NCBI GenBank assembly: GCA_053919585.1 | Contig: CM132790.1 | DNA: 64,000 bases | Direction: 5' to 3' (one strand) | Origin: Euprymna scolopes | Taxonomy: Eukaryota | Shown: positions 1 to 26,719 of the stretch, piece after piece | Position numbering within the stretch: position 1 is the stretch's first letter | How the letters are laid out: each line of letters begins with the position of its first letter | Notes under the pieces: generated by a model | Seen by the model: only the letters and a program-made list of their open reading frames with translations | Database searches by the model: none | Told to the model about the DNA's origin: nothing | Position numbers and translations under genes: made by a program

Positions 1-616
1 TGCGTTGTCATGCCAAAGGTATGCAGTTGTTGTTGAACGCACGCGGTGTCATGGAAGTCTTCTGTATTAACTTTTTTTAGCGCATGTCCGCTTTATAGGT
101 ATAAAATTTGATATTAAAGCTCTTGGAAGCATTATTTAAAAAACATATTTTTGAATAAACAGACAAAACTAATAATGGATCTGATATGGTCCGAAATTAA
201 TAAGAAATATTTCAACTTCAAAAAAAAAAATAAATACATATAAAAAGGAAAAAAAAAGAAAGGAAAAGAGAATTTGAATGATTTTTTTCTTTTAATAAAA
301 TTTTTCATCTTAATGTGTTCCAAAAACAGTTTTATCTGTTTATTCATAGTTTTTTTTTTTTTATTTTTAAAGATGCTTCGGAGTGCTTTAATACCAAAGT
401 TTATATTTTTATCTTTTTGTTTACTCAAACTGGATTTTTGAAAAAAGAAAAAAACAAGTTTTCTTGAAGTTTTCAATAGAATTAGACTTTATAACTTATA
501 AGCCGTTATGAATTTAAGTCGAGTAAGTGTTGGGGTGTCGCATAGCGATTTCTGCTGATTATAAAATTCGACTATCTGAAGCCTCGATATCTAATTTCGT
601 TTTTGAGGAGGGACAA

Positions 617-763
617 TTTGTTTTTATTATCTTACAGTCCCGATGAAGTACGTAAATTTATTTGTTTTTATTATCTTACAGTCCCGATGAAGTACGTAAA
701 TTTATTTGTTTTTATTATCTTACGGTCTCGATGAAGTAAGTAAATTTATTTGTTTTTATTATC
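617..763. repeat. 44-bp minisatellite, left part (~3 units), interrupted by the LTR element
   Basis: Unit TTATCTTACAGTCCCGATGAAGTACGTAAATTTATTTGTTTTTA; CGATG recurs at 641, 685 and 729; the array resumes at 7031. Confidence 0.95.
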
Positions 764-1041
764 TGTTGTAAATAATACATAGCTTACCTGAGTGTAGCTG
801 CCGGAGTGAGGATGGTCTTCCAACAATCAAGAAGAACAATAGCAGTGTGGTTATTTATGCTAATAGAGTAAGGTAAATTGTTATAAAAACCTTCCTCCTT
901 TGTGAAGAGTCAGTCATTATTTTTTTTTATGTTACTGTGGTTACAAGACCTGAGAAGAAGGTCGCGAAGAAAATTGTATTTTTTTCGCAACCTCACTTCA
1001 GGTTAGCTACTCTTAGTTATATGACTTTTTTTTTTCCAACA
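764..1041 (+). repeat. 5' LTR (278 bp)
   Basis: TGTTGTAAAT...TTCCAACA; by eye it differs from the 3' LTR by 2 substitutions and 3 nt of poly-T length. Confidence 0.95.
882..915 (+). promoter_or_regulatory. Putative LTR core promoter: TATA box and initiator
   Basis: TATAAAA at 882-888; TCAGTC Inr-like motif at 910-915 with its A (912) 30 nt after the TATA start. Confidence 0.6.
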
Positions 1042-1043
1042 AT

Positions 1044-1059
1044 TTGCGAAAAAAATACA
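1044..1059 (+). promoter_or_regulatory. Non-tRNA primer-binding site complementary to the element's own LTR
   Basis: TTGCGAAAAAAATACA starts 2 nt after the LTR-terminal CA and is the exact reverse complement of LTR 975-990 (and 6965-6980); no TGG tRNA-type PBS is present. Confidence 0.7.
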
Positions 1060-1151
1060 TTAGTTCAACACAATTTCTTACAGAACTTTGAGTCATTAGT
1101 AACAGCAATTAGTGACAACTCTGGAAATTGTTCGATTACCCGTACAAGGAT

Positions 1152-4100
1152 ATGGAGACCTCTGGTACTTCAACTGTTGCAGATTCCAAGGAGCGACACC
1201 GTAACCAGATTTCCATTCTGAAGATGAAAATCAAGGGTAGGCTTCGTTTGTCCCGTGGCCCAGAGATCACTCCTGCTGTATTTTCTGTATTCCACAGGGA
1301 AATTTTGGAATATATCAACGAAGTTGAAATCTCCATCTGCAAGTTGCAACTTTCCTGTGTCTCTGAAGAGGAAAGAGAACTTATGGAGTCCGATTGGCTA
1401 AGTTACCAGCTGAATTTACGGAAGGAATTAGAAGATCTCTCACTCTTGTTACATCCTCCAGAGGCTAGTGGCTATTCGGAGCGACCTTCCCTTCCATATA
1501 CGCCTGGACCTTCTACGGATAGAGCTAATTCATCATTCACTGTTAGACTACCTCAAGTTCAAATCACTGGACCAACGTTCAGTGGTCGTGAAATGGAAAA
1601 CGATAGAATGAGTTTTTACAATTTCTTATCTCGATTTGAAAATTGTGCAGCAGGCATGGCAAATGACGCAGAAAAGTTAAACTTTTTAAAATGCTCGGTG
1701 TCTGGGAGACCTCTGCTGCTGATTAATCACTTAAGTTGCATCAATACAAATTATCAGCAAGCACTGGCAGTATTGAAACGAGAATATTTAGATGTGAGTG
1801 ACATCATTGATAAGATATTCCAAGATATTATCGATTTCTCCCCCAAGGGGGAAAATTCTTATGAGGATCTTGGTAGTTTCATCTGCAGAACAGCTTCCAT
1901 TCTGGAAGAACTGGCCAGCTCTCTCGATTGTGATTTCTCTGAGGATGGTTCTGCAGGGGCCCGATTAATGGCCAAAATACTTTTTTTGAAATTTCCGAGA
2001 GCATTGAAGGGAGAGCTTATACAGTTATGTGGCTCTAGAATTCCTTCTCTGTCTGTTTTAATGCGAGACACCAGTGAGGCTATTAAACGCTTGCTAATTA
2101 AAGGCGGCGGGTTGCCTGGTTCTTCGGATATCCATCGAAACAATTCTCGGGTAACCGTTTCAAAATCTAGAGCCACTACAACCAGAGATGTTTCTTTCCG
2201 CATAGATTCAGATTGTCAGGCTCCTTCTGGTTACTCGAGTAAACTACCTCCTCTGATTTGTGTTACCTTCGGTCGAGGAGGAAGAACCATCTCTGTAAAC
2301 TGCCTATTGGATACTGGCAGTGGCAGAACGTATTTGTCTGGTGATGTCTTGCACTCCTTGGGTTCCTTGAGTTCTGACGGTTTGGATTGTCATTTGAGGC
2401 TGACTACACTTCTCGGAGAATGTGAGCAAGTATACAGAGAGGTGAAACTGGATGTGGACTTGGGGTCTGGTCATGTGGGGCACTTTCCGGTACTGGTTGC
2501 CAACTCATTGGACCTATCCTTATATCTAAAAAATTGGCATTTGCTGTTGGAGGAGTTCAAGCGAACTGGATGTTCTCTGGCTGGGCAATTTGAATCTGTC
2601 ACTGATGCGGTGGCTATAAGTGGAATTATGGGTCTGGATCTGGTGCAACATTTGGGCCCCTTACAGTTGGTGCCTTGTTTGGGGGTCGGGCTTTCTCTGT
2701 TCCTGCTGGTTTGATTCCCTTTGGTGAGGTGGACACTTTTTTTCTACAAATCCTGCCCCTATTTCAAGAGATTATACGTTGTTCAGTGCAGTGATGGAGA
2801 ATACTCCCCAAGTGGAATCATCGCATGTTTGCTTCATCCTGGAAGCCGACCCTACCTATGCGGACCCCTGGGTGGATGTCTTTCCCTCTAGCGATGTGGA
2901 AAGAGGATTAGAGAAAATGTTCAGCATTGAGTCATTGGGCATTCAGGACGGAGAAGAAATTTCAGGATATGATTAGAGTATGATTCGGCAGTTCCAGGAA
3001 TCTATAATATTCAGGGATGGTAAATATCATGTGCAATTACCCTGGCATGCAGATAAGCTGGCTCTGGTTCCTTCTAATCATGCTATTGCTTTGCACGTTT
3101 TGGATCGTGTGGTCAGGAGCCTGGAGAAGAAGGGGCTGTACCAGGAGTATGTAGATGTATTCCTTCAGCAGCTACAAGAGGGCATCATAGAGGAAATACA
3201 GGTGGATCCTCAAAATTTTGTGGACTATGTATGGGTGCCTCATCGGCCAGTTTTCAAGACGGATCCGGCAGCTACTACTAAAATCAGGCCTGTATTTAAC
3301 TGTAGCTTGAAGGTCGGTAACTCTGCCTCTCTTAACGAGGCTGCATACTCTGGTGTGAATATGACAGGAGATATGTTGGACCTGTTGATGTCTTTTAGTT
3401 TTTTTTTGTTGATTTTTAGTCTTGATTGCAGACATCAGGAAAGCTTTCTTGATGGTTCGCCTTGCACTGGAGGCAGACAAGAACAGGTTCTGTTTTTTTG
3501 TGAAGGATGGTGATCGCCTTCGATGTTTCCGCTATGCCACATTGATTTTCCGGTTCACCTCGAGTCCCTTTATATTGGGAAGTATCTTGAAGTTTCATGC
3601 AGCCCAATATCCCTTTGATGAATGTCGAGTTGCGATGGAGAACCAATTCTATGTCGACAACCTGGTGGTTACTGAGTCTGACCCAGCAAAGCTTGTAAGG
3701 CTGTATTCCCAGGTTAGGAGGCGGTTGCAGGAAGGTGGATTTGTGGTGCAGTCCTGTAACTCAAACTGCGACAGCCTTAGGGAGGAGATGAGGAAAGATG
3801 GTACATTGAGTACTCATGAGGCCGGATGGGAGATGGTGCTCGGGTACCGGTATGATCCCGCACTGCTCCTGTTAAGTGTGATCCGAGTGCATCTACTAAG
3901 AGGCGAATCCTTTCGGAATCGGCAAAGGTATTTGATCCCTTATCTCTTTGCCTGCCTGTGACTATAAGGAGTAGGATTTTGGTGGGAGAATTATGGAAGC
4001 GAGGCGTGCAATGGGATGAGGAAGTCTCTCCAGAGTTTCAGTCTTCTTGGAGGAACCTGGCAGAAGACTTATCTAAATTGAGTGACATGCATTTCTGCAG

Positions 4101-6501
4101 ACAGGCCCATGACGGGAACCGAACTGGAGAGTTATACCTGTTTTGTGACGCTTCTAAAGAAGCATATGGATTTGCAGCCTACTATGTTCAGTACAACAAT
4201 TCTGCATTGATCTTTGCCAAAGCACGAGTGGCTCCAGTGAAGGATAAGACATTACCAACTTTAGAACTAATGGCGGTATTTCTTGCTCTGAAGTGTTTGC
4301 CCACTATCTTGGTAGGATGCAAGGGTGTCCGCCCTTCTAGGTTGTGTGTGGTAACAGATGCACAAGTAGTATTGTCATGGATTTTATCAGAAACGATGAC
4401 TAGTAAAAGCATCTTTGCTAGAAACAGGTTAAAGGATGTGCTGCTAATGAGCTTGGATTTGGAAACGAATTACGGCATCAGGCCGACCTTTAGGTATGTT
4501 TCTACCACCGAAAACCCGGCTGACTTGATCACTCATGGATTAACGATAAGGAAGTTCCGAGACAACTTTGACTTTTGGTACTATGGCCCTTCTTGGTTGC
4601 GCGGTGGGGTCTTGACTTGGCCGGAGCAGGAGTTGCCCTGTCTTGATGATAGGTGCCAGCAGATTGTTCGTTCATCAACAAATTTTGCGGTGATTGTGGA
4701 TGAGGAGTGTGCTTCGGTGATCTCCATGCGGCGGTTCTCTACGTTTACCCGTTTGTTGAGGGTAACTTCTTTAGTCTTCCGATTCATCGGCTTGATGAGG
4801 AAAAGGGAAGACAACTACAACAAGAAAGCCGCAATTTACTTAATAAAATGTTCTCAACAGCAGGAATTTATGGCTGAATTGAATTACCAGCGGAATCCTA
4901 TGGTAAAGCCTGCACCTAATCGTGTTCGAGCACTAGATCTTTTTCTGGATGAGGAAGGGTTGATCCGCTCGCATGGACGGCTGGACAGGTCTTCTCAGTT
5001 TTCTTATGAAGTTAAGAATCCCTTGTTGCTGGGCAAGAATCATCACCTGACCCGACTTGTAATATTAGACTGCCATCTTAAATGTTCCCATCTGGGTACA
5101 GGATCAACCTTAACGGAATTGAGATGTCAAGGATACTGGGTGCCTCAAGGGAGGCAGGCAGTCAAAAATGCCCTGAATTCCTGCACAAGGTGTAAAAGAT
5201 ACAATTCTAGGCCGGTACTGCCTGAGAACATGGCCAATCTACCAACTTCTCGTGTCGAATTTGAGGTTCCTTATAGGAATACTGGAGTGGACTTCACAGG
5301 ACATTTTTGGGTGAAGGAGGGTAACAGTGAGAAAAAAATGTATCTGTTGTTGTTCACTTGTTTGAGTGTAAGAGCAGTGCATATAGAGGTGGTACCTGAC
5401 ATGAGTATATTGTCCTTTTTTCAGGCTCTAGTCAGATTTACTAATGCACATGGTGTTCCAGAGTCAATTCTCAGCGACAACGCAAAAACCTTTCTGGGTA
5501 GTGGAAGACTGTTTAAGCGCCTTTGTCTTCTCCAGGACTACCAGGCCAAATTTGGGTCATGTAACATTAAGTAGGAGACAATTCCTCTATTTTCCCCCTG
5601 GGTTGGAGGTGTATGGGAGCGTAGCATCAAGACTTTAAAATCTTGCCTATACAAGGTCATTGGTAGGGGTAAGGTAGATTATTATACCTTCCTAACTATT
5701 GTCTCAGATATTCAGCGGGCTGTAAACAACAGGCCCCTTACTTATCAAGAGTCCGCTGACAGGCAACCAATGATTATCACACCCAATATGTTTATTAGAC
5801 CCAATAAAAGCCCTGGTCTATTGGTACCGTTGGGAAGAGATGATCTCTCCACCATGGTTCCTCCCAGCCGGAGAAGGTTGATCGAGACGATTGGATTACG
5901 AAATGAATGGTTGTCAAGATTTAGAGAACTGTGGTACAGGGAGTACCTTCTGGATCTTAGAGGAAGGATGCCAGGAAGATCTCGGATACCATTTCAGAAT
6001 CGCATTAAAAGAAATGATGTAGTCTTGGTCAAGAGCCCTTTAAAACCACGACCCTTTTGGATGTTGGGTACTATACTTGAGGTTCTCCCAGGACAAGATG
6101 GAGTGGTGAGGACAGTTCGTGTCAGACAGGGCGACGGTGTGGTGAACGTCCATTCACTGAAGAATTTATATCCAATAGAAATTTCACAATCTGATGATGA
6201 TCTTGGGGAAAGTGAACCAAATCAGGCGGGTGCATCCTCGCCTGTTGCTGCAGGTAGCAGTCAAAACCAGGAATCCTCTAGTTCATTTTCGGAAGGAGAT
6301 GGCACCATTTGGTTGTGTCCTGCCTGCAATAGACCTCAAGGGAACCAAGATATGATATGCTGCGATTCCTGTGATGAGTGGTATCATTTTGAGTGTGTTG
6401 GAATTGACTTGGCTCCACCCGCTAGACATAAATGGTACTGCAGTGATTGTGCACCTCAAAGGAGACGAAGGGGTAGACCTAGTCTGTTACCCGATCAATA
6501 G
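1152..6501 (+). pseudogene. Disrupted gag-pol polyprotein of the BEL/Pao element
   Basis: ORF pieces 1128-2714 (DUF1759-like Gag, protease LLDTGS), 2779-3513, 3422-3961 (RT YVDN 3650-3661), 3958-5574 (RNase H, IN HHCC, GVDFTG, SDNA), WERS after a TAG at 5572, and 5770-6501 (IN C-terminus, PHD). About 4 frameshifts and 2 in-frame stops. Confidence 0.9.
6307..6480 (+). other. C4HC3 PHD finger plus AT-hook at the integrase C-terminus
   Basis: IWLCPACNRPQGNQDMICCDSCDEWYHFECVGIDLAPPARHKWYCSDC then RRRRGRP, in frame with the integrase and inside the LTRs. Confidence 0.9.
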
Positions 6502-6664
6502 AAGTAGTCTTGGGTAGGACTATAAACTACAACCGACAGCGGGGCCTAGGCTAAGGGACAGAATGAGGGTACCCTGAACCACTGTTACCTCCAGGTAGCC
6601 CTTGACTGAGGCCTAGCACCTGTTAGTCCCCCTGCAGGGTCACGCCAACTTAGTTTTTTTATGA

Positions 6665-6666
<2 letters not shown>

Positions 6667-6723
<57 letters not shown>
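6667..6723. repeat. (AT)n microsatellite in the element's 3' UTR
   Basis: Pure AT run. Confidence 0.95.
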
Positions 6724-6728
<5 letters not shown>

Positions 6729-6748
6729 CACTTTTTTTTTCTTTTGTT

Positions 6749-6755
6749 GGGAGAG
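6749..6755 (+). promoter_or_regulatory. Short polypurine tract
   Basis: GGGAGAG abuts the 3' LTR and follows a T-rich tract. Confidence 0.6.
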
Positions 6756-7030
6756 TGTTGTAAATAATACATAGCTTACCTGAGTGTAGCTGCCGGAGTG
6801 AGGATGGTCTTCCAACAATCAAGAAGAACAATAGCATTGTGGTTATTTATGCTAATAGAGTAAGGTAAATTGTTATAAAAACCTTCCTCCTTTGTGAAGA
6901 GTCAGTCATTATTTTTTTATGTTACTGTGGTTACAAGACCTGAGAAGAAGGTCGCGAAGAAGATTGTATTTTTTTCGCAACCTCACTTCAGGTTAGCTAC
7001 TCTTAGTTATATGACTTTTTTTTTCCAACA
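6756..7030 (+). repeat. 3' LTR (275 bp)
   Basis: Near-identical copy of 764-1041. Confidence 0.95.
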
Positions 7031-7168
7031 TATCTTACAGTCCCGATGAAGTACGTAAATTTATTTGTTTTTATTATCTTACGGTCTCGATGAAGTACGT
7101 AAATTTATTTGTTTTTATTATCTTACGGTCCAGATGAAGTACGTAAATTTATTTGTTTTTATTATCTT
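7031..7168. repeat. 44-bp minisatellite, right part (~3 units)
   Basis: Same unit as 617-763, in register across the insertion. Confidence 0.95.
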
Positions 7169-11881: not shown

Positions 11882-14800
11882 CTTTTATACTTCTCTATCT
11901 AGTCTTTATTCATCAAACTCCCGCATACACTTTCATAATTCTCTATCTAGTCTTTATTCATCAAACTCCCGTATACACTTTCATAATTCTCTATCTAGTC
12001 TTTATTCATCAAACTCCCGTATACACTTTCATAATTCTCTATCTAGTCTTTATTCATCAAACTCCCGCATACACTTTCATAATTCTCTATCTAGTCTTTA
12101 TTAATCAAACTCCCGTATACACTTTCATAATTCTCTATCTAGTCTTTATTCATCAAACTCCCGCATACACTTTCATAATTCTCTATCTAGTCTTTATTCA
12201 TCAAACTCCCGTATACACTTTCATAATTCTCTATCTAGTCTTTATTCATCAAACTCCCGTATACACTTTCATAATTCTCTATCTAGTCTTTATTCATCCA
12301 ACTCCCATATACACTTTCATAATTCTCTATCTAGTCTTTATTCATCCAACTCCCATATACACTTTCATAATTCTCTATCTAGTCTTTATTCATCCAACTC
12401 CCATATACACTTTCATAATTCTCTATCTAGTCTTTATTCATCCAACTCCCATATACACTTTTATAATTATCTATATAGTCTTTATTCATCCAACTCCCAT
12501 ATACACTTTTATAATTCTCTATCTAGTCTTTATTCATCCAACTCCCATATACACTTTTATAATTCTCTATCTAGTCTTTATTCATCCAACTCCCATATAC
12601 ACTTTTATAATTCTCTATCTAGTCTTTATTCATCCAACTCCCATATACACTTTCATAATTCTCTATCTAGTCTTTATTCATCAAACTCCCATATACACTT
12701 TTATAATTCTCTATCTAGTCTTTATTCATCCTACTCCCATATACACTTTTATAATTCTCTATCTAGTCTTTATTCATCCAACTCCCATATACACTTTTAT
12801 AATTCTCTATCTAGTCTTTATTCATCCAACTCCCATATACACTTTTATAATTCTCTATCTAGTCTTTATTCATCCAACTCCCATATACACTTTTATAATT
12901 CTCTATCTAGTCTTTATTCATCCAACTCCCATATACACTTTCATAATTCTCTATCTAGTCTTTATTCATCAAACTCCCATATACACTTTTATAATTCTCT
13001 ATCTAGTCTTTATTCATCCTACTCCCATATACACTTTTATAATTCTCTATCTAGTCTTTATTCATCCAACTCCCATATACACTTTTATAATTCTCTATCT
13101 AGTCTTTATTCATCCTACTCCCATATACACTTTTATAATTCTCTATCTAGTCTTTATAATCCAACTCCCATATACACTTTTATACTTCTCTATCTAGTCT
13201 TTATTCATCCAACTCCCGTATACACTTTCATAATTCTCTATCTAGTCTTTATAATCCAACTCCCATATACACTTTTATACTTCTCTATCTAGTCTTTATT
13301 CATCCAACTCCCGTATACACTTTCATAATACTCTATCTAGTCTTTATAATCCAACTCCCATATACACTTTTATACTTCTCTATCTAGTCTTTATTCATCC
13401 AACTCCCGTATACACTTTCATAATTCTCTATCTAGTCTTTATAATCCAACTCCCGTATACACTTTTATACTTCTCTATCTAGCCTTTATTCATCCAACTC
13501 CCGTATACAGTTTTATAATTCTCTATCTAGTCTTTATAATCCAACTCCCATATACACTTTTATAATTCTCTATCTAGTCTTTATTCATCCAACTCCCATA
13601 TACACTTTTATAATTCTCTATCTAGTCTTTATTCATCCAACTCCCATATACACTTTTATAATTCTCTATATAGTCTTTATTCATCCAACTCCCGTATACA
13701 CTTTCATAATTCTCTATCTAGTCTTTATTCATCAAACTCCCGCATACACTTTCATAATTCTCTATCTAGTCTTTATTCATCAAACTCCCGCATACACTTT
13801 CATAATTCTCTATCTAGTCTTTATTCATCAAACTCCCGTATACACTTTCATAATTCTCTATCTAGTCTTTATTCATCAAACTCCCATATACACTTTTATA
13901 CTTCTCTATCTAGTCTTTATTCATCAAACTCCCGTATACACTTTCATAATTCTCTATCTAGTCTTTATTCATCAAACTCCCATATACACTTTTATAATTC
14001 TCTATCTAGTCTTTATTCATCAAACTCCCGCATACACTTTCATAATTCTCTATCTAGTCTTTATTCATCAAACTCCCGCATACACTTTCATAATTCTCTA
14101 TCTAGTCTTTATTCATCAAACTCCCGCATACACTTTCATAATTCTCTATCTAGTCTTTATTCATCAAACTCCCGCATACACTTTCATAATTCTCTATCTA
14201 GTCTTTATTCATCAAACTCCCGCATACACTTTCATAATTCTCTATCTAGTCTTTATTCATCAAACTCCCGTATACACTTTCATAATTCTCTATCTAGTCT
14301 TTATTCATCAAACTCCCGTATACACTATCATAATTCTCTATCTAGTCTTTATTCATCAAACTCCCGTATACACTTTCATAATTCTCTATCTAGTCTTTAT
14401 TCATCAAACTCCCGTATACACTTTCATAATTCTCTATCTAGTCTTTATTCATCCAACTCCCATATACACTTTCATAATTCTCTATCTAGTCTTTATTCAT
14501 CCAACTCCCATATACACTTTCATAATTCTCTATCTAGTCTTTATTAATCCAACTCCCATATACACTTTTATAATTATCTATATAGTCTTTATTCATCCAA
14601 CTCCCATATACACTTTTATAATTCTCTATCTAGTCTTTATTCATCCAACTCCCATATACACTTTTATAATTCTCTATCTAGTCTTTATTCATCCAACTCC
14701 CATATACACTTTTATAATTCTCTATCTAGTCTTTATAATCCAACTCCCATATACACTTTCATAATTCTCTATCTAGTCTTTATTCATCCAACTCCCATAT

Positions 14801-17800
14801 ACACTTTCATAATTCTCTATCTAGTCTTTATTCATCCAACTCTCATATACACTTTCATAATTCTCTATCTAGTCTTTATTCATCCAACTCCCATATACAC
14901 TTTTATAATTCTCTATCTAGTCTTTATTCATCCTACTCCCATATACACTTTTATAATTCTCTATCTAGTCTTTATAATCCAACTCCCATATACACTTTTA
15001 TACTTCTCTATCTAGTCTTTATTCATCCAACTCCCGTATACACTTTCATAATTCTCTATCTAGTCTTTATAATCCAACTCCCATATACACTTTTATACTT
15101 CTCTATCTAGTCTTTATTCATCCAACTCCCGTATACACTTTCATAATACTCTATCTAGTCTTTATAATCCAACTCCCATATACACTTTTATACTTCTCTA
15201 TCTAGTCTTTATTCATCCAACTCCCGTATACACTTTCATAATTCTCTATCTAGTCTTTATAATCCAACTCCCGTATACACTTTTATACTTCTCTATCTAG
15301 TCTTTATTCATCCAACTCCCGTATACAGTTTTATAATTCTCTATCTAGTCTTTATAATCCAACTCCCATATACACTTTTATAATTCTCTATCTAGTCTTT
15401 ATTCATCCAACTCCCATATACACTTTTATAATTCTCTATATAGTCTTTATTCATCCAACTCTCATATACACTTTTATAATTCTCTATCTAGTCTTTATTC
15501 ATCCAACTCCCATATACACTTTTATAATTCTCTATCTAGTCTTTATTCATCCAACTCCCATATACACTTTTATAATTTTCTATCTAGTCTTTATTCATCC
15601 AACTCCCATATACACTTTTATAATTCTCTATATAGTCTTTATTCATCCAACTCCCATATACATATTTATAATTCTCTATCTAGTCTTTATTCATCCAACT
15701 CCCATATACACTTTTATAATTCTCTATCTAGTCTTTATTCATCCAACTCCCATATACACTTTTATAATTCTCTATATAGTCTTTATTCATCCAACTCCCA
15801 TATACACTTTTATAATTCTCTATCTAGTCTTTATTTATCAAACTCCCGTATACACTTTCATAATTCTCTATCTAGTCTTTATTGATCCAACTCCCATATA
15901 CACTTTCATAATTCTCTATCTAGTCTTTATTCATCCAACTCCCATATACACTTTCATAATTCTCTATATAGTCTTTATTCATCCAACTCCCGTATACACT
16001 TTCATAATTCTCTATCTAGTCTTTATTCATCAAACTCCCGCATACACTTTCATAATTCTCTATCTAGTCTTTATTCATCAAACTCCCGCATACACTTTCA
16101 TAATTCTCTATCTAGTCTTTATTCATCAAACTCCCGTATACACTTTCATAATTCTCTATCTAGTCTTTATTCATCAAACTCCCGTATACACTTTCATAAT
16201 TCTCTATCTAGTCTTTATTCATCCAACTCCCATATACACTTTCATAATTCTCTATCTAGTCTTTATTCATCCAACTCCCATATACACTTTTATACTTCTC
16301 TATCTAGTCTTTATTCATCCAACTCCCATATACACTTTCATAATTCTCTATCTAGTCTTTATTCATCCAACTCCCGTATACACTTTCATAATTCTCTATC
16401 TAGTCTTTATTCATCAAACTCCCATATACACTTTCATAATTCTCTATCTAGTCTTTATTCATCCAACTCCCATATACACTTTCATAATTCTCTATCTAGT
16501 CTTTATTCATCCAACTCCCATATACACTTTTATAATTATCTATCTAGTCTTTATTCATCCAACTCCCATATACACTTTTATAATTCTCTATCTAGTCTTT
16601 ATTCATCCAACTCCCATATACACTTTTATAATTCTCTATCTAGTCTTTATTCATCCAACTCCCATATACACTTTTATAATTCTCTATCTAGTCTTTATAA
16701 TCCAACTCCCATATACACTTTCATAATTCTCTATCTAGTCTTTATTCATCCAACTCTCATATACACTTTCATAATTCTCTATCTAGTCTTTATTCATCCA
16801 ACTCCCATATACACTTTTATAATTCTCTATCTAGTCTTTATTCATCCTACTCCCATATACACTTTTATAATTCTCTATCTAGTCTTTATAATCCAACTCC
16901 CATATACACTTTTATACTTCTCTATCTAGTCTTTATTCATCCAACTCCCGTATACACTTTCATAATTCTCTATCTAGTCTTTATAATCAAACTCCCATAT
17001 ACACTTTTATACTTCTCTATCTAGGCTTTATTCATCCAACTCCCGTATACACTTTCATAATTCTCTATCTAGTCTTTATAATCCAACTCCCATATACACT
17101 TTTATACTTCTCTATCTAGTCTTTATTCATCCAACTCCCGTATACACTTTCATAATTCTCTATCTAGTCTTTATAATCCAACTCCCGTATACACTTTTAT
17201 ACTTCTCTATCTAGTCTTTATTCATCCACCTCCCGTATACAGTTTTATAATTCTCTATCTAGTCTTTATAATCCAACTCCCATATACACTTTTATAATTC
17301 TCTATCTAGTCTTTATTCATCCAACTCCCATATACACTTTTATAATTCTCTATATAGTCTTTATTCATCCAACTCTCATATACACTTTTATAATTCTCTA
17401 TCTAGTCTTTATTCATCCAACTCCCATATACACTTTTATAATTCTCTATCTAGTCTTTATTCATCCAACTCCCATATACACTTTTATAATTTTCTATCTA
17501 GTCTTTATTCATCCAACTCCCATATACACTTTTATAATTCTCTATATAGTCTTTATTCATCCAACTCCCATATACATATTTATAATTCTCTATCTAGTCT
17601 TTATTCATCCAACTCCCATATACACTTTTATAATTCTCTATCTAGTCTTTATTCATCCAACTCCCATATACACTTTTATAATTCTCTATATAGTCTTTAT
17701 TCATCCAACTCCCATATACACTTTTATAATTCTCTATCTAGTCTTTATTTATCAAACTCCCGTATACACTTTCATAATTCTCTATCTAGTCTTTATTGAT

Positions 17801-20800
17801 CCAACTCCCATATACACTTTCATAATTCTCTATCTAGTCTTTATTCATCCAACTCCCATATACACTTTCATAATTCTCTATATAGTCTTTATTCATCCAA
17901 CTCCCGTATACACTTTCATAATTCTCTATCTAGTCTTTATTCATCAAACTCCCGCATACACTTTCATAATTCTCTATCTAGTCTTTATTCATCAAACTCC
18001 CGTATACACTTTCATAATTCTCTATCTAGTCTTTATTCATCAAACTCCCGTATACACTTTCATAATTCTCTATCTAGTCTTTATTCATCCAACTCCCATA
18101 TACACTTTCATAATTCTCTATCTAGTCTTTATTCATCCAACTCCCATATACACTTTTATACTTCTCTATCTAGTCTTTATTCATCCAACTCCCATATACA
18201 CTTTCATAATTCTCTATCTAGTCTTTATTCATCCAACTCCCGTATACACTTTCATAATTCTCTATCTAGTCTTTATTCATCAAACTCCCATATACACTTT
18301 CATAATTCTCTATCTAGTCTTTATTCATCCAACTCCCATATACACTTTCATAATTCTCTATCTAGTCTTTATTCATCCAACTCCCATATACACTTTTATA
18401 ATTATCTATCTAGTCTTTATTCATCCAACTCCCATATACACTTTTATAATTCTCTATCTAGTCTTTATTCATCCAACTCCCATATACACTTTTATAATTC
18501 TCTATCTAGTCTTTATTCATCCAACTCCCATATACACTTTTATAATTCTCTATCTAGTCTTTATAATCCAACTCCCATATACACTTTCATAATTCTCTAT
18601 CTAGTCTTTATTCATCCAACTCTCATATACACTTTCATAATTCTCTATCTAGTCTTTATTCATCCAACTCCCATATACACTTTTATAATTCTCTATCTAG
18701 TCTTTATTCATCCTACTCCCATATACACTTTTATAATTCTCTATCTAGTCTTTATAATCCAACTCCCATATACACTTTTATACTTCTCTATCTAGTCTTT
18801 ATTCATCCAACTCCCGTATACACTTTCATAATTCTCTATCTAGTCTTTATAATCAAACTCCCATATACACTTTTATACTTCTCTATCTAGTCTTTATTCA
18901 TCCAACTCCCGTATACACTTTCATAATACTCTATCTAGTCTTTATAATCCAACTCCCATATACACTTTTATACTTCTCTATCTAGTCTTTATTCATCCAA
19001 CTCCCGTATACACTTTCATAATTCTCTATCTAGTCTTTATAATCCAACTCCCGTATACACTTTTATACTTCTCTATCTAGTCTTTATTCATCCAACTCCC
19101 GTATACAGTTTTATAATTCTCCATCTAGTCTTTATAATCCAACTCCCATATACACTTTCATAATTCTCTATCTAGTCTTTATTCATCCAACTCCCATATA
19201 CACTTTTATAATTCTCTATATAGTCTTTATTCATCCAACTCTCATATACACTTTTATAATTCTCTATCTAGTCTTTATTCATCCAACTCCCATATACACT
19301 TTTATAATTCTCTATCTAGTCTTTATTCATCCAACTCCCATATACACTTTTATAATTTTCTATCTAGTCTTTATTCATCCAACTCCCATATACACTTTTA
19401 TAATTCTCTATATAGTCTTTATTCATCCAACTCCCATATACACATTTATAATTCTCTATCTAGTCTTTATTCATCCAACTCCCATATACACTTTTATAAT
19501 TCTCTATCTAGTCTTTATTCATCCAACTCCCATATACACTTTTATAATTCTGTATATAGTCTTTATTCATCCAACTCCCATATACACTTTTATACTTCTC
19601 TATATAGTCTTTATTCATCCAACTCCCATATACACTTTTATAATTCTCTATCTAGTCTTTATTCATCCAACTCCCATATACACTTTTATAATTCTCTATA
19701 TAGTCTTTATTCATCCAACTCTCATATACACTTTTATACTTCTCTATCTAGTCTTTATAATCCAACTCCCATATACACTTTTATAATTCTCTATCTAGTC
19801 TTTATTCACCCAACTCCTATATACACTTTTCTAATTCTCTATCTAGTCTTTATTCATCCAACTCTCATATACACTTTTATACTTCTCTATCTAGTCTTTA
19901 TTCATACAACTCCCATATACACTTTTATAATTCTCTATCTAGTCTTTATTCATCCAACTCCCATATAAACTTTTATAATTCTCTATATAGTCTTTATTTA
20001 TCCAACTCCCATATACACTTTTATAATTCTCTATCTAGTCTTTATTTATCCAACTCCCATATACACTTTTATAATTCTCTATCTAGTCTTTATTCATCCA
20101 ACTACCATATACACTTTCATAATTCTCTATCTAGTCTTTATTCATCCAACTCCCATATACACTTTTATAATTCTCTATCTAGTCTTTATTCATCCAACTC
20201 CCATATACACTTTCATAATTCTCTATCTAGTCTTTATTCATCAAACTCCCATATACACTTTTATAATTCTCTATCTAGTCTTTATTCATCCTACTCCCAT
20301 ATACACTTTTATAATTCTCTATCTAGTCTTTATTCATCCAACTCCCATATACACTTTTATAATTCTCTATCTAGTCTTTATTCATCCTACTCCCATATAC
20401 ACTTTTATAATTCTCTATCTAGTCTTTATAATCCAACTCCCATATACACTTTTATACTTCTCTATCTAGTCTTTATTCATCCAACTCCCGTATACACTTT
20501 CATAATTCTCTATCTAGTCTTTATAATCCAACTCCCATATACACTTTTATACTTCTCTATCTAGTCTTTATTCATCCAACTCCCGTATACACTTTCATAA
20601 TACTCTATCTAGTCTTTATAATCCAACTCCCATATACACTTTTATACTTCTCTATCTAGTCTTTATTCATCCAACTCCCGTATACACTTTCATAATTCTC
20701 TATCTAGTCTTTATAATCCAACTCCCGTATACACTTTTATACTTCTCTATCTAGCCTTTATTCATCCAACTCCCGTATACAGTTTTATAATTCTCTATCT

Positions 20801-23800
20801 AGTCTTTATAATCCAACTCCCATATACACTTTTATAATTCTCTATCTAGTCTTTATTCATCCAACTCCCATATACACTTTTATAATTCTCTATCTAGTCT
20901 TTATTCATCCAACTCCCATATACACTTTTATAATTCTCTATATAGTCTTTATTCATCCAACTCCCATATACACTTTTATAATTCTCTATCTAGTCTTTAT
21001 TCATCAAACTCCCGTATACACTTTCATAATTCTCTATCTAGTCTTTATTCATCAAACTCCCGTATACACTTTCATAATTCTCTATCTAGTCTTTATTCAT
21101 CAAACTCCCGCATACACTTTCATAATTCTCTATCTAGTCTTTATTCATCAAACTCCCGCATACACTTTCATAATTCTCTATCTAGTCTTTATTCATCAAA
21201 CTCCCGTATACACTTTCATAATTCTCTATCTTGTCTTTATTCATCAAACTCCCGTATACACTTTCATAATTCTCTATCTAGTCTTTATTCATCCAACTCC
21301 CATATACACTTTCATAATTCTCTATCTAGTCTTTATTCATCCAACTCCCATATACACTTTCATAATTCTCTATCTAGTCTTTATTCATCCAACTCCCATA
21401 TACACTTTCATAATTCTCTATCTAGTCTTTATTAATCCAACTCCCATATACACTTTTATAATTATCTATATAGTCTTTATTCATCCAACTCCCATATACA
21501 CTTTTATAATTCTCTATCTAGTCTTTATTCATCCAACTCCCATATACACTTTTATAATTCTCTATCTAGTCTTTATTCATCCAACTCCCATATACACTTT
21601 TATAATTCTCTATCTAGTCTTTATAATCCAACTCCCATATACACTTTCATAATTCTCTATCTAGTCTTTATTCATCCAACTCCCATATACACTTTCATAA
21701 TTCTCTATCTAGTCTTTATTCATCCAACTCCCATATACACTTTCATAATTCTCTATCTAGTCTTTATTCATCCAACTCCCATATACACTTTCATAATTCT
21801 CTATCTAGTCTTTATTAATCCAACTCCCATATACACTTTTATAATTATCTATATAGTCTTTATTCATCCAACTCCCATATACACTTTTATAATTCTCTAT
21901 CTAGTCTTTATTCATCCAACTCCCATATACACTTTTATAATTCTCTATCTAGTCTTTATTCATCCAACTCCCATATACACTTTTATACTTCTCTATCTAG
22001 TCTTTATTCATCCAACTCCCGTATACACTTTCATAATTCTCTATCTAGTCTTTATTCATCCAACTCCCATATACACTTTCATAATTCTCTATCTAGTCTT
22101 TATTCATCCAACTCTCATATACACTTTCATAATTCTCTATCTAGTCTTTATTCATCCAACTCCCATATACACTTTTATAATTCTCTATCTAGTCTTTATT
22201 CATCCTACTCCCATATACACTTTTATAATTCTCTATCTAGTCTTTATAATCCAACTCCCATATACACTTTTATACTTCTCTATCTAGTCTTTATTCATCC
22301 AACTCCCGTATACACTTTCATAATTCTCTATCTAGTCTTTATAATCCAACTCCCATATACACTTTTATACTTCTCTATCTAGTCTTTATTCATCCAACTC
22401 CCGTATACACTTTCATAATTCTCTATCTAGTCTTTATAATCCAACTCCCATATACACTTTTATACTTCTCTATCTAGTCTTTATTCATCCAACTCCCGTA
22501 TACACTTTCATAATTCTCTATCTAGTCTTTATAATCCAACTCCCATATACACTTTTATACTTCTCTATCTAGTCTTTATTCATCCAACTCCCGTATACAC
22601 TTTCATAATACTCTATCTAGTCTTTATAATTCAACTCCCATATACACTTTTATACTTCTCTATCTAGTCTTTATTCATCCAACTCCCGTATACACTTTCA
22701 TAATTCTCTATCTAGTCTTTATAATCCAACTCCCGTATACACTTTTATACTTCTCTATCTAGTCTTTATTCATCCAACTCCCGTATACAGTTTTATAATT
22801 CTCTATCTAGTCTTTATAATCCAACTCCCATATACACTTTTATAATTCTCTATCTAGTCTTTATTCATCCAACTCCCATATACACTTTTATAATTCTCTA
22901 TATAGTCTTTATTCATCCAACTCTCATATACACTTTTATAATTCTCTATCTAGTCTTTATTCATCCAACTCCCATATACACTTTTATAATTCTCTATCTA
23001 GTCTTTATTCATCCAACTCCCATATACACTTTTATAATTTTCTATCTAGTCTTTATTCATCCAACTCCCATATACACTTTTATAATTCTCTATATAGTCT
23101 TTATTCATCCAACTCCCATATACATATTTATAATTCTCTATCTAGTCTTTATTCATCCAACTCCCATATACACTTTTATAATTCTCTATCTAGTCTTTAT
23201 TCATCCAACTCCCATATACACTTTTATAATTCTCTATATAGTCTTTATTCATCCAACTCCCATATACACTTTTATAATTTTCTATCTAGTCTTTATTCAT
23301 CCAACTCCCATATACACTTTTATAATTTTCTATCTAGTCTTTATTCATCCAACTCCCATATACACTTTTATAATTTTCTATCTAGTCTTTATTCATCCAA
23401 CTCCCATATACACTTTTATAATTTTCTATCTAGTCTTTATTCATCCAACTCCCATATACACTTTTATAATTCTCTATCTAGTCTTTATTCATCCAACTCC
23501 CATATACACTTTCATAATTCTCTATATAGTCTTTATTCATCCAACTCCCATATACACTTTCATAATTCTCTATCTAGTCTTTATTCATCCAACTCCCATA
23601 TACACTTTTATAATTCTCTATATAGTCTTTATTCATCCAACTCCCATATACATATTTATAATTCTCTATCTAGTCTTTATTCATCCAACTCCCATATACA
23701 CTTTTATAATTCTCTATCTAGTCTTTATTCATCCAACTCCCATATACACTTTTATAATTCTCTATATAGTCTTTATTCATCCAACTCCCATATACACTTT

Positions 23801-26719
23801 TATAATTTTCTATCTAGTCTTTATTCATCCAACTCCCATATACACTTTTATAATTTTCTATCTAGTCTTTATTCATCCAACTCCCATATACACTTTTATA
23901 ATTTTCTATCTAGTCTTTATTCATCCAACTCCCATATACACTTTTATAATTTTCTATCTAGTCTTTATTCATCCAACTCCCATATACACTTTTATAATTC
24001 TCTATCTAGTCTTTATTCATCCAACTCCCATATACACTTTCATAATTCTCTATATAGTCTTTATTCATCCAACTCCCATATACACTTTCATAATTCTCTA
24101 TCTAGTCTTTATTCATCCAACTCCCATATACACTTTCATAATTCTCTATATAGTCTTTATTCATCCAACTCCCATATACACTTTCATAATTCTCTATATA
24201 GTCTTTATTCATCCAACTCCCATATACACTTTTATAATTCTCTATATAGTCTTTATTCATCCAACTCCCATATACACTTTTATAATTTTCTATCTAGTCT
24301 TTATTCATCCAACTCCCATATACACTTTTATAATTCTCTATCTAGTCTTTATTCATCCAACTCCCATATACACTTTCATAATTCTCTATATAGTCTTTAT
24401 TCATCCAACTCCCATATACACTTTCATAATTCTCTATCTAGTCTTTATTCATCCAACTCCCATATACACTTTCATAATTCTCTATATAGTCTTTATTCAT
24501 CCAACTCCCATATACACTTTCATAATTCTCTATATAGTCTTTATTCATCCAACTCCCGTATACACTTTCATAATTCTCTATCTAGTCTTTATTCATCCAA
24601 CTCCCATATACACTTTCATAATTCTCTATATAGTCTTTATTCATCCAACTCCCATATACACTTTCATAATTCTCTATATAGTCTTTATTCATCCAACTCC
24701 CGTATACACTTTCATAATTCTCTATCTAGTCTTTATTCATCAAACTCCCGTATACACTTTCATAATTCTCTATATAGTCTTTATTCATCCAACTCCCGTA
24801 TACACTTTCATAATTCTCTATCTAGTCTTTATTCATCAAACTCCCGTATACACTTTCATAATTCTCTATATAGTCTTTATTCATCCAACTCCCGTATACA
24901 CTTTCATAATTCTCTATCTAGTCTTTATTTATCAAACTCCCGTATACACTTTCATAATTCTCTATCTAGTCTTTATTTATCAAACTCCCGTATACACTTT
25001 CATAATTCTCTATCTAGTCTTTATTCATCAAACTCCCGCATACACTTTCATAATTCTCTATCTAGTCTTTATTCATCAAACTCCCGTATACACTTTCATA
25101 ATTCTCTATCTAGTCTTTATTCATCAAACTCCCGTATACACTTTCATAATTCTCTATCTAGTCTTTATTCATCCAACTCCCATATACACTTTCATAATTC
25201 TCTATCTAGTCTTTATTCATCCAACTCCCATATACACTTTCATAATTCTCTATCTAGTCTTTATTCATCCAACTCCCATATACACTTTCATAATTCTCTA
25301 TCTAGTCTTTATTCATCCAACTCCCATATACACTTTTATAATTATCTATCTAGTCTTTATTCATCCAACTCCCATATACACTTTTATAATTCTCTATCTA
25401 GTCTTTATTCATCCAACTCCCATATACACTTTTATAATTCTCTATCTAGTCTTTATTCATCCAACTCCCATATACACTTTTATAATTCTCTATCTAGTCT
25501 TTATAATCCAACTCCCATATACACTTTCATAATTCTCTATCTAGTCTTTATTCATCCAACTCTCATATACACTTTCATAATTCTCTATCTAGTCTTTATT
25601 CATCCAACTCCCATATACACTTTTATAATTCTCTATCTAGTCTTTATTCATCCTACTCCCATATACACTTTTATAATTCTCTATCTAGTCTTTATAATCC
25701 AACTCCCATATACACTTTTATACTTCTCTATCTAGTCTTTATTCATCCAACTCCCGTATACACTTTCATAATTCACTATCTAGTCTTTATAATCAAACTC
25801 CCATATACACTTTTATACTTCTCTATCTAGTCTTTATTCATCCAACTCCCGTATACACTTTCATAATACTCTATCTAGTCTTTATAATCCAACTCCCATA
25901 TACACTTTTATACTTCTCTATCTAGTCTTTATTCATCCAACTCCCGTATACACTTTCATAATTCTCTATCTAGTCTTTATAATCCAACTCCCGTATACAC
26001 TTTTATACTTCTCTATCTAGTCTTTATTCATCCAACTCCCGTATACAGTTTTATAATTCTCTATATAGTCTTTATTCATCCAACTCCCATATACACTTTT
26101 ATAATTCTCTATCTAGTCTTTATTCATCCAACTCCCATATACACTTTCATAATTCTCTATATAGTCTTTATTCATCCAACTCCCATATACACTTTTATAA
26201 TTCCCTATCTAGTCTTTATTCATCCAACTCCCATATACACTTTTATAATTCTCTATCTAGTCTTTATTCATCCAACTCCCATATACACTTTTATAATTCT
26301 CTATCTAGTCTTTATTCATCCGATTCCCATATACCTTTATAATTCTCTATATAGTCTTTATTCATCCAACTCCCATATACACTTTTATAATTCTCTATAT
26401 AGTCTTTATTCATCCAACTCCCATATACACTTTTATAATTCTCTATATAGTCTTTATTCATCCAACTCCCATATACACTTTTATAATTCTCTATCTAATC
26501 TTTATTCATCCAACTCCCATATACACTTTTATAATTCTCTATATAGTCTTTAATCATCCAACTCCCATATACACTTTTATAATTCTCTATATAGTCTTTA
26601 TTTATCCAACTCCCATATACACTTTTATAATTCTCTATCTAGTCTTTATTCATCCAACTCCCATATACACTTTTATAATTCTCTATATAGTCTTTATTTA
26701 TCCAACTCCCATATACACT
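11882..26719. repeat. 48-bp satellite array, ~14.8 kb, ~310 monomers
   Basis: Consensus ACTTTYATAATTCTCTATCTAGTCTTTATTCATCMAACTCCCRTATAC with recurrent 47-bp variants; no spacers. Confidence 0.98.

What the first reader, a model, noticed from the sequence alone, without database searches (positions are those of the whole stretch)
975..1059. Putative self-priming: PBS is a perfect 16-nt complement of the element's own LTR
Seen: LTR 975-990 TGTATTTTTTTCGCAA is the exact reverse complement of 1044-1059. That site begins exactly 2 nt after the terminal CA, the canonical PBS position, and no TGG is present. The polarity is right, since the primer 3' end points into U5. The segment is identical in the 3' LTR (6965-6980). 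Known: Tf1 primes with its first 11 nt after cleavage. Inference: TATA/Inr place the TSS near 912, so the primer would be internal (+64 to +79). That implies either cleavage at 990/991, or priming by the transcript's own 3' end if it stops near 6980 (I see no AATAAA in the LTR). Either would differ from Tf1. Caveat: 7 of the 16 pairs are a T/A homopolymer.
Basis: partly seen in the sequence, partly recalled or inferred. Interest (0 to 1): 0.9.

Follow-up and report, generated by a model that had tools for sequence, protein, structure and literature searches.

The report
Self-priming BEL/Pao retrotransposon, hairpin-embedded primer
A degraded BEL/Pao-type LTR retrotransposon, probably in a cephalopod genome, has a primer-binding site that pairs with 16 bases of its own LTR, not a host tRNA, and a distant relative keeps this pairing through matching changes on both sides, so this lineage probably primes its own reverse transcription.

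Summary
Window 975-990 is the exact reverse complement of 1044-1059. That site starts 2 nt after the LTR's terminal CA, and TSD and LTR alignment fix the boundary. None of 40,000 shuffles exceeded 13 nt.

The element (764-7030) is a broken BEL/Pao retrotransposon with a C-terminal PHD finger.

The key new evidence is a relative with 49% gag identity (L004). It has the same geometry with a different sequence. Of 16 primer-PBS pairs, 5 changed on both sides and stayed Watson-Crick, 1 became G.U and 1 broke (chance about 2e-5). The U5 between the arms is only 43% identical. Two other BEL/Pao elements with definable LTRs carry ordinary TGG-type sites and at most 5-6 nt of LTR complement.

The primer arm is also the 3' arm of a conserved, co-varying LTR hairpin, and the PBS mimics that hairpin's 5' arm. 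Predicted folding favours the hairpin by 4-8 kcal/mol.

Best reading: Tf1-like self-priming that arose in a superfamily described as tRNA-primed, gated by a hairpin. The transcription start, poly(A) site and cleavage are unverified. It is a new variant of a known kind.

The parts
760..763 (+). Left copy of the 4-bp target-site duplication (TATC)
   Evidence: The same TATC lies at 7031-7034, and the flanks rejoin into one 44-bp repeat unit
764..1041 (+). 5' LTR, 278 bp, TGTTG...CAACA
   Evidence: Aligns with 6756-7030 with 5 differences
882..888 (+). TATAAAA, candidate TATA box
   Evidence: Read directly. It lies 30 nt upstream of A912. It is not conserved in L004
910..915 (+). TCAGTC, candidate initiator; inferred transcription start at A912
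   Evidence: Read directly. Inference only; not conserved in L004
931..943 (+). 13-nt block TTACTGTGGTTAC, identical in the relative L004; function unknown
   Evidence: It is the start of the best-conserved LTR stretch (932-969: 31 of 40 columns identical)
937..1010 (+). Extended imperfect hairpin in the LTR (-30.6 kcal/mol); its upper stem is 960-974 paired with 978-992
   Evidence: The upper stem is the RNAalifold consensus of window and L004, with 3 pairs changed on both sides and kept
960..974 (+). 5' arm of the hairpin; pairs with the primer arm and resembles the PBS (GCGAAGAAAAT against GCGAAAAAAAT)
975..990 (+). Proposed self-primer arm. Predicted 3' end at A990, predicted cut between 990 and 991
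   Evidence: Perfect 16-nt complement of 1044-1059. Co-varies with the PBS in L004. The cut itself is inferred
991..1041 (+). U5-like stretch between primer arm and LTR end; with spacer 1042-1043 it would be the 53-nt template of the first cDNA
   Evidence: Only 23 of 53 aligned positions are identical to L004, while the flanking arms stay complementary
1042..1043 (+). 2-nt spacer (AT) between the LTR's terminal CA and the PBS
   Evidence: L004 has the same 2-nt spacing (TT)
1044..1059 (+). Primer-binding site complementary to the element's own LTR
   Evidence: Unique in the window
1152..2714 (+). gag (DUF1759) and aspartyl-protease-like region, open from ATG 1152
   Evidence: About 50% identical to Acanthosepion pharaonis proteins
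2980..5574 (+). pol fragments in shifted frames (2980-3513, 3422-3961, 3958-5574): Pao RT/RNase H region (Peptidase_A17), integrase zinc-binding and core domains. The copy is broken
5770..6501 (+). Integrase C-terminal region (DUF5641) ending in a PHD finger (about 6316-6450)
   Evidence: Relatives also carry PHD ORFs after pol
6749..6755 (+). Short polypurine tract GGGAGAG abutting the 3' LTR
   Evidence: Read directly
6756..7030 (+). 3' LTR, 275 bp; carries a second copy of the primer arm at 6965-6980
7031..7034 (+). Right copy of the target-site duplication (TATC)

Best explanation
This is a BEL/Pao (Belpaoviridae-type) LTR retrotransposon whose minus-strand cDNA synthesis is primed by its own RNA instead of a host tRNA.

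Shown here: the 16 nt at 975-990 in the LTR are perfectly complementary to the site at the canonical primer-binding position (1044-1059, 2 nt after the LTR's CA). This complementarity is maintained by compensatory changes in a distant relative.

Inferred mechanism, by analogy with Tf1:
1. In the particle, the primer arm leaves its local hairpin partner (960-974) and pairs with the PBS. The PBS is a better complement: 16 Watson-Crick pairs at -18.3 kcal/mol, against 11-12 pairs with a G.U at -11.9.
2. The element's RNase H cuts at the end of that RNA duplex, between A990 and C991.
3. The freed 3'-OH is extended through 1043 to 991. This makes a 53-nt strong-stop cDNA, which must transfer to the same stretch copied from the 3' LTR.
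4. Later steps copy the primer back into the PBS of the progeny. A change in the primer arm is therefore inherited by the PBS, which would explain the fast co-variation.

If transcription starts at 912, as the TATA and initiator motifs suggest, the primer is internal. The released primer RNA would then be about 79 nt with a 16-nt paired 3' end, unlike Tf1, where the primer is the first 11 nt of the mRNA.
For: Exact 16-nt complement at the exact PBS position, with LTR ends fixed by the TSD and LTR alignment. 0 of 40,000 shuffles reached 14 nt or more.

Relative L004 (gag 49% identical) has a homologous LTR, ends in ACA, has a 2-nt spacer, and then a 14-bp complement (one G.U) to the homologous LTR segment. 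Its own shuffle test gave 3 of 5,000.

Of the 16 pairs, 9 are unchanged, 5 changed on both sides and stayed Watson-Crick, 1 changed G-C to G.U and 1 is broken at the far end. The probability that 5 PBS changes fall opposite changed primer positions and are complementary is about 2e-5. The U5 between the arms is only 23 of 53 identical.

There is no TGG at the site. The implied primer contains U7 (U4 runs in L004), which established knowledge of RNA polymerase III termination makes unlikely in a tRNA or other Pol III transcript.

BEL/Pao controls with definable LTRs (L027, L030) have TGG-type sites and only 5-6 nt of LTR complement.

The element meets the published operational criterion for predicted self-priming: at least 10 bp of 5' LTR complement starting 0-5 bp after the LTR (PMC6317226). 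The Tf1 precedent is described in PMC7175516.
Against: Nothing here shows priming, cleavage or the RNA ends.

Predicted folding prefers the local hairpin. Forcing the primer-PBS duplex costs 8.2 kcal/mol in the window RNA starting at 912, and 3.8 kcal/mol in L004. The duplex dominates only if the RNA starts at about 975.

A 79-nt unmodified primer gives no obvious stop for plus-strand strong-stop synthesis. This is my inference from the retroviral model.

The model needs the transcript to extend past 6981 in the 3' LTR. No canonical poly(A) signal is present, and the only AAGAAA (967) is absent from the 3' LTR.

The covariation rests on two families only. Both copies are dead: the ORFs are broken in the window copy, and the L004 gene does not translate to the query protein. 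Host tRNAs and small RNAs could not be searched (no tRNA gene in the window). The arms are A/T-rich.
Confidence: 0.6

Rival explanations
1. Self-priming by the 3' copy. The copy of the arm transcribed from the 3' LTR (6965-6980), on the same or the co-packaged RNA, pairs with the PBS. It is cut at the duplex end or simply ends there, and it primes synthesis through the whole of U5 and R.
For: The arm is identical in the 3' LTR. CA|A at 989/990 would be a plausible cleavage dinucleotide 18 nt after AAGAAA in the 5' LTR copy. This route copies R completely, so the first strand transfer needs no U5 sequence at the RNA 3' end (inference).
Against: The 3' LTR copy reads AAGAAG, not AAGAAA. A poly(A) tail would pair for one further base only (U1043) and then leave an unpaired 3' flap. 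At the 3' end the arm always has its hairpin partner upstream. No precedent is known to me.
Confidence: 0.12
2. Regulatory or structural pairing only. The LTR arm and PBS region form an alternative long-range stem, comparable to the U5-leader or PBS-segment structures of retroviruses. It would control translation, dimerisation or packaging, while the real primer is an unidentified host RNA.
For: The arm takes part in two mutually exclusive conserved pairings, which resembles an RNA switch. The hairpin is the thermodynamically preferred state. Host small RNAs could not be searched.
Against: A host primer would hold the PBS constant, yet 5 of 16 PBS positions differ between the two families, each matched by its own LTR. 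In both families the duplex ends exactly 2 nt after CA, which a structural stem does not require. No other PBS candidate or TGG lies near the LTR end. The implied primer's U-runs argue against a Pol III transcript.
Confidence: 0.18
3. Chance complementarity of low-complexity A/T-rich sequence in an A/T-rich genome.
For: 7 of the 16 pairs are a T/A homopolymer. The LTR carries several T runs, and the PBS A-run can also pair with the T10 run at 1026-1035.
Against: 0 of 40,000 shuffles reached 14 nt. The same geometry with compensatory changes recurs in an independent family.
Confidence: 0.02

Closest known systems
Tf1/Tf2 of Schizosaccharomyces pombe and the Tf1/sushi group (Ty3/gypsy chromoviruses): self-primed reverse transcription
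   Same: The PBS lies just after the 5' LTR and is complementary to the element's own LTR-derived RNA, not to a tRNA. The primer would be released by a cut at the end of the RNA duplex. The primer 3' end points into U5 (PMC7175516; PMC5341516).
   Different: This element belongs to a different superfamily, BEL/Pao by Pfam hallmarks. The duplex is 16 nt rather than 11. The primer arm is probably internal to the transcript (+64 to +79 if the start is at 912), not its first bases. The arm is the 3' arm of a conserved hairpin whose 5' arm the PBS mimics. None of the biochemistry has been shown here.
Predicted self-priming in the plant Tcn1 (Ty3/gypsy) and TAR/Houba/Osr-1 (Ty1/copia) lineages
   Same: Those cases are recognised by the same sequence criterion: at least 10 bp of 5' LTR complement starting 0-5 bp after the LTR (PMC6317226). 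They are likewise computational predictions.
   Different: Different superfamilies and hosts. Here the prediction is backed by compensatory changes between two families and by the hairpin/PBS mimicry.
Canonical BEL/Pao (Belpaoviridae, Semotivirus) elements
   Same: gag DUF1759, Pao RT/RNase H (Peptidase_A17), integrase, DUF5641, TG...CA LTRs of 0.2-1.2 kb and a metazoan host (PMC8742986).
   Different: The family profile states priming by a host tRNA (Arg or Gly) at an 18-nt PBS. Achilles uses tRNA-Tyr (PMC4580426), and L027 and L030 carry TGG-type sites. This element and L004 have no TGG and pair with their own LTR. The C-terminal PHD finger is also not part of the profile.
Retroviral U5-leader, U5-IR and PBS-segment structures
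   Same: U5 or R sequences pair with sequences at or around the PBS and shape initiation. An R-region hairpin is present (from my own knowledge; review PMC11181671 was listed but not read).
   Different: Those stems flank or partly cover a tRNA-complementary PBS. Here the whole PBS is the complement of the LTR arm, and no tRNA-type site exists.
Internal or half-tRNA priming (copia, Osser, Bianca lineages)
   Same: The PBS lacks TGG (PMC6317226).
   Different: Those sites match internal parts of tRNA-Met or tRNA-Ile and are conserved across families. Here the site differs between families and tracks the element's own LTR, and the implied primer has U7.

Membership tests
Self-priming LTR retrotransposons (mechanistic class founded by Tf1) | The sequence at the PBS position (0-5 nt after the 5' LTR) is complementary to at least 10-11 nt of the element's own LTR | tested here: met
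   16 of 16 nt, starting 2 nt after CA. 0 of 40,000 shuffles reached 14 nt or more
Self-priming LTR retrotransposons (mechanistic class founded by Tf1) | No complementarity to a host tRNA 3' end | tested here: inconclusive
   No TGG at 1042-1121 and no tRNA gene in the window. A host tRNA or small-RNA set was not available. The U7 argument against a Pol III primer is inference
Self-priming LTR retrotransposons (mechanistic class founded by Tf1) | Primer-PBS complementarity is maintained in relatives | tested here: met
   In L004, 15 of 16 pairs are kept and 5 changed on both sides. Only two families could be compared
Self-priming LTR retrotransposons (mechanistic class founded by Tf1) | The primer is the 5'-terminal bases of the mRNA | tested here: inconclusive
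   The TATA (882) and Inr (912) motifs would put the arm at +64 to +79, but they are not conserved in L004. No transcript data were available
Self-priming LTR retrotransposons (mechanistic class founded by Tf1) | RNase H cleaves the RNA duplex to release the primer, and the primer sequence is inherited by the progeny PBS | not testable with these tools
   This needs biochemistry or cDNA junction mapping. A perfect PBS match next to an imperfect hairpin fits inheritance but does not prove it
Tf1/sushi clade of Ty3/gypsy (phylogenetic membership) | Ty3/gypsy-type gag-pol, usually with a chromodomain | tested here: not met
   Pfam gives the BEL/Pao hallmarks DUF1759, Peptidase_A17 and DUF5641, plus a PHD finger and no chromodomain
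BEL/Pao (Belpaoviridae) | BEL/Pao-type gag, pol and integrase domains | tested here: met
   Homologues are BEL/Pao proteins of metazoans
BEL/Pao (Belpaoviridae) | LTRs with TG...CA ends and a short target-site duplication | tested here: met
   TGTTG...CAACA ends, LTRs of 278 and 275 bp, 4-bp TSD
BEL/Pao (Belpaoviridae) | 18-nt PBS complementary to the 3' end of a host tRNA (ICTV profile) | tested here: not met
   No TGG-type site; the site pairs with the element's own LTR. The profile is in PMC8742986. Controls L027 and L030 do have TGG-type sites
Retroviral-type U5-leader or PBS-occluding stem (structure only) | The stem accompanies a separate tRNA-complementary PBS | tested here: not met
   No such PBS is present near the LTR end

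The most novel reading that the evidence does not exclude
A clade of BEL/Pao retrotransposons in cephalopod-like hosts abandoned tRNA priming and independently evolved a hairpin-gated self-primer. The primer is the 3' arm of a conserved LTR hairpin, and the PBS is a better-matching mimic of the hairpin's 5' arm. Strand exchange between the two partners would switch the RNA from a closed state to a priming-competent state, and a cut at 990/991 would release a tRNA-sized (about 79 nt) internal primer. This would be self-priming in a third LTR-retrotransposon superfamily, with an architecture unlike Tf1.
Probability: 0.4. Interest if true: 0.7.

Novelty: new variant of a known kind. Interest (0 to 1): 0.6.

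Why it matters
Self-primed reverse transcription has been demonstrated only for Tf1/Tf2. It has been predicted for a few Ty3/gypsy and Ty1/copia lineages. The current family profile describes BEL/Pao elements as tRNA-primed.

A BEL/Pao lineage with a co-varying self-primer would show that independence from host tRNAs has evolved repeatedly across LTR-retrotransposon superfamilies.

The three-way arrangement (hairpin 5' arm, primer arm, PBS) also gives a concrete, testable case of an RNA switch controlling initiation of reverse transcription. It raises a further question: how is plus-strand strong-stop synthesis stopped on an unmodified, possibly long primer?

There is a practical point for annotation. 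Pipelines that look only for tRNA-type PBS will mis-score such elements.

Tried and rejected
1. Other copies in the window: none. BLAST of the element against the window found only its own LTR pair and (TA)n matches.

2. Closest relatives: 50-80% identical proteins occur in ENA sample ERZ21867824, in Acanthosepion pharaonis assembly GCA_903632075.3, and in Logan runs ERR12370320 and ERR14857105. Their DNA was not retrievable because the files are too large. L005 has only 39 nt upstream of gag.

3. Collection scans:
- The gag profile found nothing in viral contigs, metagenome contigs or genome contigs.
- The pol profile found nothing in viral contigs.
- A DNA pattern from the conserved LTR block gave 18 metagenome hits and 1 viral hit. 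The 18 metagenome hits showed no LTR similarity beyond the pattern and are chance matches; the viral hit was not examined.

4. More distant BEL/Pao loci:
- L001: old element with 84% LTR identity and unclear ends.
- L002: no LTR pair in the contig.
- L003: TARA scaffold where only 298 nt of the LTR is duplicated.
- L025: no LTR overlap; a TGG follows a possible ...AACA end.
The LTR ends could not be defined in any of these, so they neither support nor refute the claim.

5. Rfam on 700-1300: only chance-level hits.

6. Literature: no paper in the library reports self-priming in BEL/Pao. The original Tf1 papers (PMC1369541, PMC109269, PMC6388632) are not held. The organism of run SRR8281666 could not be identified.

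7. I did not run the count of structure pairs. Pair counts were computed in a script instead, and RNAalifold was run on the alignment.

8. Ideas considered and dropped: the hairpin as a microRNA-like precursor supplying the primer (a 3p product would not end at 990); a TSS at 975 (no promoter motif there, though it cannot be excluded); TATAAA at 882 as the poly(A) signal (this would leave almost no R).

Full report
**What is there**

The finding lies at the 5' end of an LTR retrotransposon spanning window 764-7030 on the + strand.
- The 5' LTR (764-1041, 278 bp) and 3' LTR (6756-7030, 275 bp) differ at 5 positions and run TGTTG...CAACA.
- The element is flanked by a 4-bp duplication, TATC (760-763 and 7031-7034). 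It sits inside a 44-bp tandem repeat whose two halves rejoin into one unit when the element is removed. The LTR boundaries are therefore fixed independently of the finding.
- A short polypurine tract, GGGAGAG (6749-6755), abuts the 3' LTR.
- Pfam identifies BEL/Pao hallmarks: DUF1759 in gag, Peptidase_A17 (the Pao RT/RNase H region), Integrase_H2C2, rve and DUF5641. There is also a PHD finger at the very C-terminus.
- The coding region is broken into at least five pieces in shifted frames, so this copy is dead.
- The nearest proteins, at about 50% gag identity, are from the cuttlefish Acanthosepion pharaonis and an ENA assembly. The host is therefore probably a cephalopod. This is inference.

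**Checking the observation**

Window 975-990 is the exact reverse complement of 1044-1059, and the same 16-mer lies at 6965-6980. The match cannot be extended on either side.
- The downstream arm starts exactly 2 nt after the LTR's terminal CA.
- No TGG occurs before 1122, and no AATAAA or ATTAAA lies in the LTR.
- I asked for the longest LTR complement that starts 0-5 nt after the LTR. The observed value is 16. In 40,000 dinucleotide-preserving shuffles (LTR or downstream sequence) the maximum was 13.

The primer arm has a second partner.
- In the minimum-free-energy fold of an RNA starting at 912, positions 978-992 pair with 960-974. This is the top of a long imperfect hairpin, 937-1010, at -30.6 kcal/mol.
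- The PBS is nearly a copy of that hairpin's 5' arm (GCGAAGAAAAT against GCGAAAAAAAT), extended to pair with the loop.
- As isolated duplexes, primer-PBS is stronger: -18.3 against -11.9 kcal/mol.
- In context, forcing primer-PBS costs 8.2 kcal/mol, and its pair probability is about 0.
- If the RNA begins at 975, the primer-PBS duplex dominates, with probability about 1.

**Relatives**

DNA of the closest relatives could not be fetched because the files are too large. A profile search with gag found more distant families. One Logan contig was retrievable with its 5' LTR: L004, from run SRR8281666.
- Its gag is 49% identical to the window's.
- Its LTR (76-398) is recognisably homologous. It has the same TGTTGTAAAT start and a 13-nt block, TTACTGTGGTTAC, identical to window 931-943. 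The best-conserved stretch corresponds to window 932-969.
- It ends in ...GACA, followed by a 2-nt spacer and then TTGCAAAAGAAAAC. That sequence pairs with the homologous LTR segment GTTTTCTTTTGTAA: 14 bp with one G.U. Only 3 of 5,000 shuffles reached this.

Column by column, the 16 primer-PBS pairs compare as follows:

| Fate of the pair in L004 | Number of pairs |
|---|---|
| Unchanged | 9 |
| Changed on both sides, still Watson-Crick | 5 |
| G-C changed to G.U | 1 |
| Broken (at the far end of the duplex) | 1 |

- The primer arm has 7 changes and the PBS has 5. The probability that all 5 PBS changes fall opposite changed primer positions and are the complementary base is about 2e-5.
- The U5 between the arms is only 23 of 53 identical.
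- The local hairpin is also kept. RNAalifold returns it as the consensus, with 3 pairs changed on both sides and 3 pairs with a one-sided change to G.U (two of them in L004, one in the window's own 3' LTR).
- Two of the primer-arm changes are matched in both partners at once.
- In L004 the hairpin state is favoured by 3.8 kcal/mol.

**Controls**

Contaminated MAG contigs supplied two BEL/Pao elements with clean LTR pairs: L027 (188-bp LTRs, 100% identical) and L030 (206-bp LTRs, 96.6% identical).
- Both have a TGG-initiated site, TGGTGCTGTGAC..., shortly after the LTR.
- Their best LTR complement at that position is only 5-6 nt.
- The ICTV profile states that Belpaoviridae are primed by host tRNA-Arg or tRNA-Gly at an 18-nt PBS (PMC8742986).
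- The BEL/Pao element Achilles uses tRNA-Tyr (PMC4580426).
- The window's clade therefore departs from the superfamily norm.

**Mechanism**

Shown:
- A site at the exact primer position is complementary to the element's own LTR.
- The complementarity is maintained by compensatory change.
- A conserved competing hairpin exists.

[quoted passage not shown] Here the arm would exchange its hairpin partner for the PBS. A cut between A990 and C991 would give the 3'-OH. Extension through 1043 to 991 would give a 53-nt strong-stop cDNA, which must transfer to the same stretch at the RNA's 3' end.

Because later steps copy the primer into the progeny PBS, primer-arm mutations would be passed to the PBS automatically. 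I recall this from the Tf1 work and could not read those papers here. It fits the perfect PBS match standing next to an imperfect hairpin.

The implied primer's U7 (U4 runs in L004) argues against a Pol III transcript such as a tRNA. This rests on established knowledge of Pol III termination.

**Open points**

- The transcription start is not known. TATAAAA (882) and TCAGTC (A912) are well placed in the window but are not conserved in L004. The fact that LTR conservation begins near 916-932 weakly favours a start upstream of the hairpin, because R and U5 tend to be better conserved than U3 (PMC3601003).
- With a start at 912, the released primer would be about 79 nt. I see no obvious stop for plus-strand strong-stop synthesis on it.
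- No poly(A) signal is evident. AAGAAA at 967 is AAGAAG in the 3' LTR.
- The 3' copy of the arm could be the one that primes.
- A purely regulatory pairing with an unknown host primer cannot be excluded. It fits poorly with a PBS that changes between families in step with its own LTR.

**Comparison and novelty**

The element works like the Tf1/sushi self-primers. It meets the published sequence criterion for predicted self-priming (PMC6317226). It is not a member of that clade: it is BEL/Pao.

No paper in the searchable library reports self-priming in BEL/Pao. I therefore rate it a new variant of a known kind. It shows self-priming in a third superfamily, with a hairpin-embedded and probably internal primer.

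**Verdict**

- The self-priming interpretation is supported by comparative evidence, but only two families could be compared and there is no experiment.
- Confidence in Tf1-like self-priming is 0.6.
- Interest is 0.6.

Noticed in passing
window 5770-6501 (PHD about 6316-6450): The integrase C-terminal region (DUF5641) ends in a PHD finger (PF00628, E=1.2e-10), where chromoviruses carry a chromodomain. Relatives in ERZ21867824 also have PHD ORFs just after pol. This suggests chromatin-mark-guided integration in this BEL/Pao clade. A literature search found no description of it.
   Followed up: partly
window 616-764 and 7031-7168: The element is inserted in a 44-bp tandem repeat (about 3 copies on each side), with the TSD TATC. 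The two halves rejoin into a continuous array.
   Followed up: yes
window 11882-26719: A 14.8-kb satellite array with a 48-bp period, about 310 copies and 95% matches.
   Followed up: no
window 931-943; L004 280-292: A 13-nt block, TTACTGTGGTTAC, is identical between two families whose gag is only 49% identical. It lies just 5' of and overlapping the base of the hairpin. Its function is unknown; it could be a promoter element, a packaging signal or a dimerisation signal.
   Followed up: partly
window 6667-6723: A (TA)n microsatellite of about 56 nt lies inside the element's 3' untranslated region, between the pol stop and the polypurine tract. Similar (TA)n tracts occur at 29.5, 33.4, 47.5, 58.9 and 60.3 kb.
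   Followed up: no
L027 6861-6910: In this tRNA-primed BEL/Pao control, the last ~50 nt of the 5' LTR are repeated in tandem directly after the LTR, before the TGG-type PBS. The repeated unit contains a degenerate PBS-like copy, TGATGCTGTAACCAGGAT.
   Followed up: no
L003 508-522 and 778-792: This intact TARA-metagenome BEL/Pao element (1922-aa gag-pol, related at gag level) has a perfect 15-nt inverted repeat upstream of gag. Its 3' arm starts 5 nt after a CA, but the LTR end could not be defined, so its meaning is open.
   Followed up: partly
window 38089-38484 (-) and 57275-57853 (+): There are weak Pfam hits below the curated cut-offs: a CCHC zinc knuckle, possibly a remnant of another retroelement gag, and an SRCR domain fragment.
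   Followed up: no
window 63257-64000: A 23-bp tandem repeat of about 32 copies runs to the end of the window.
   Followed up: no
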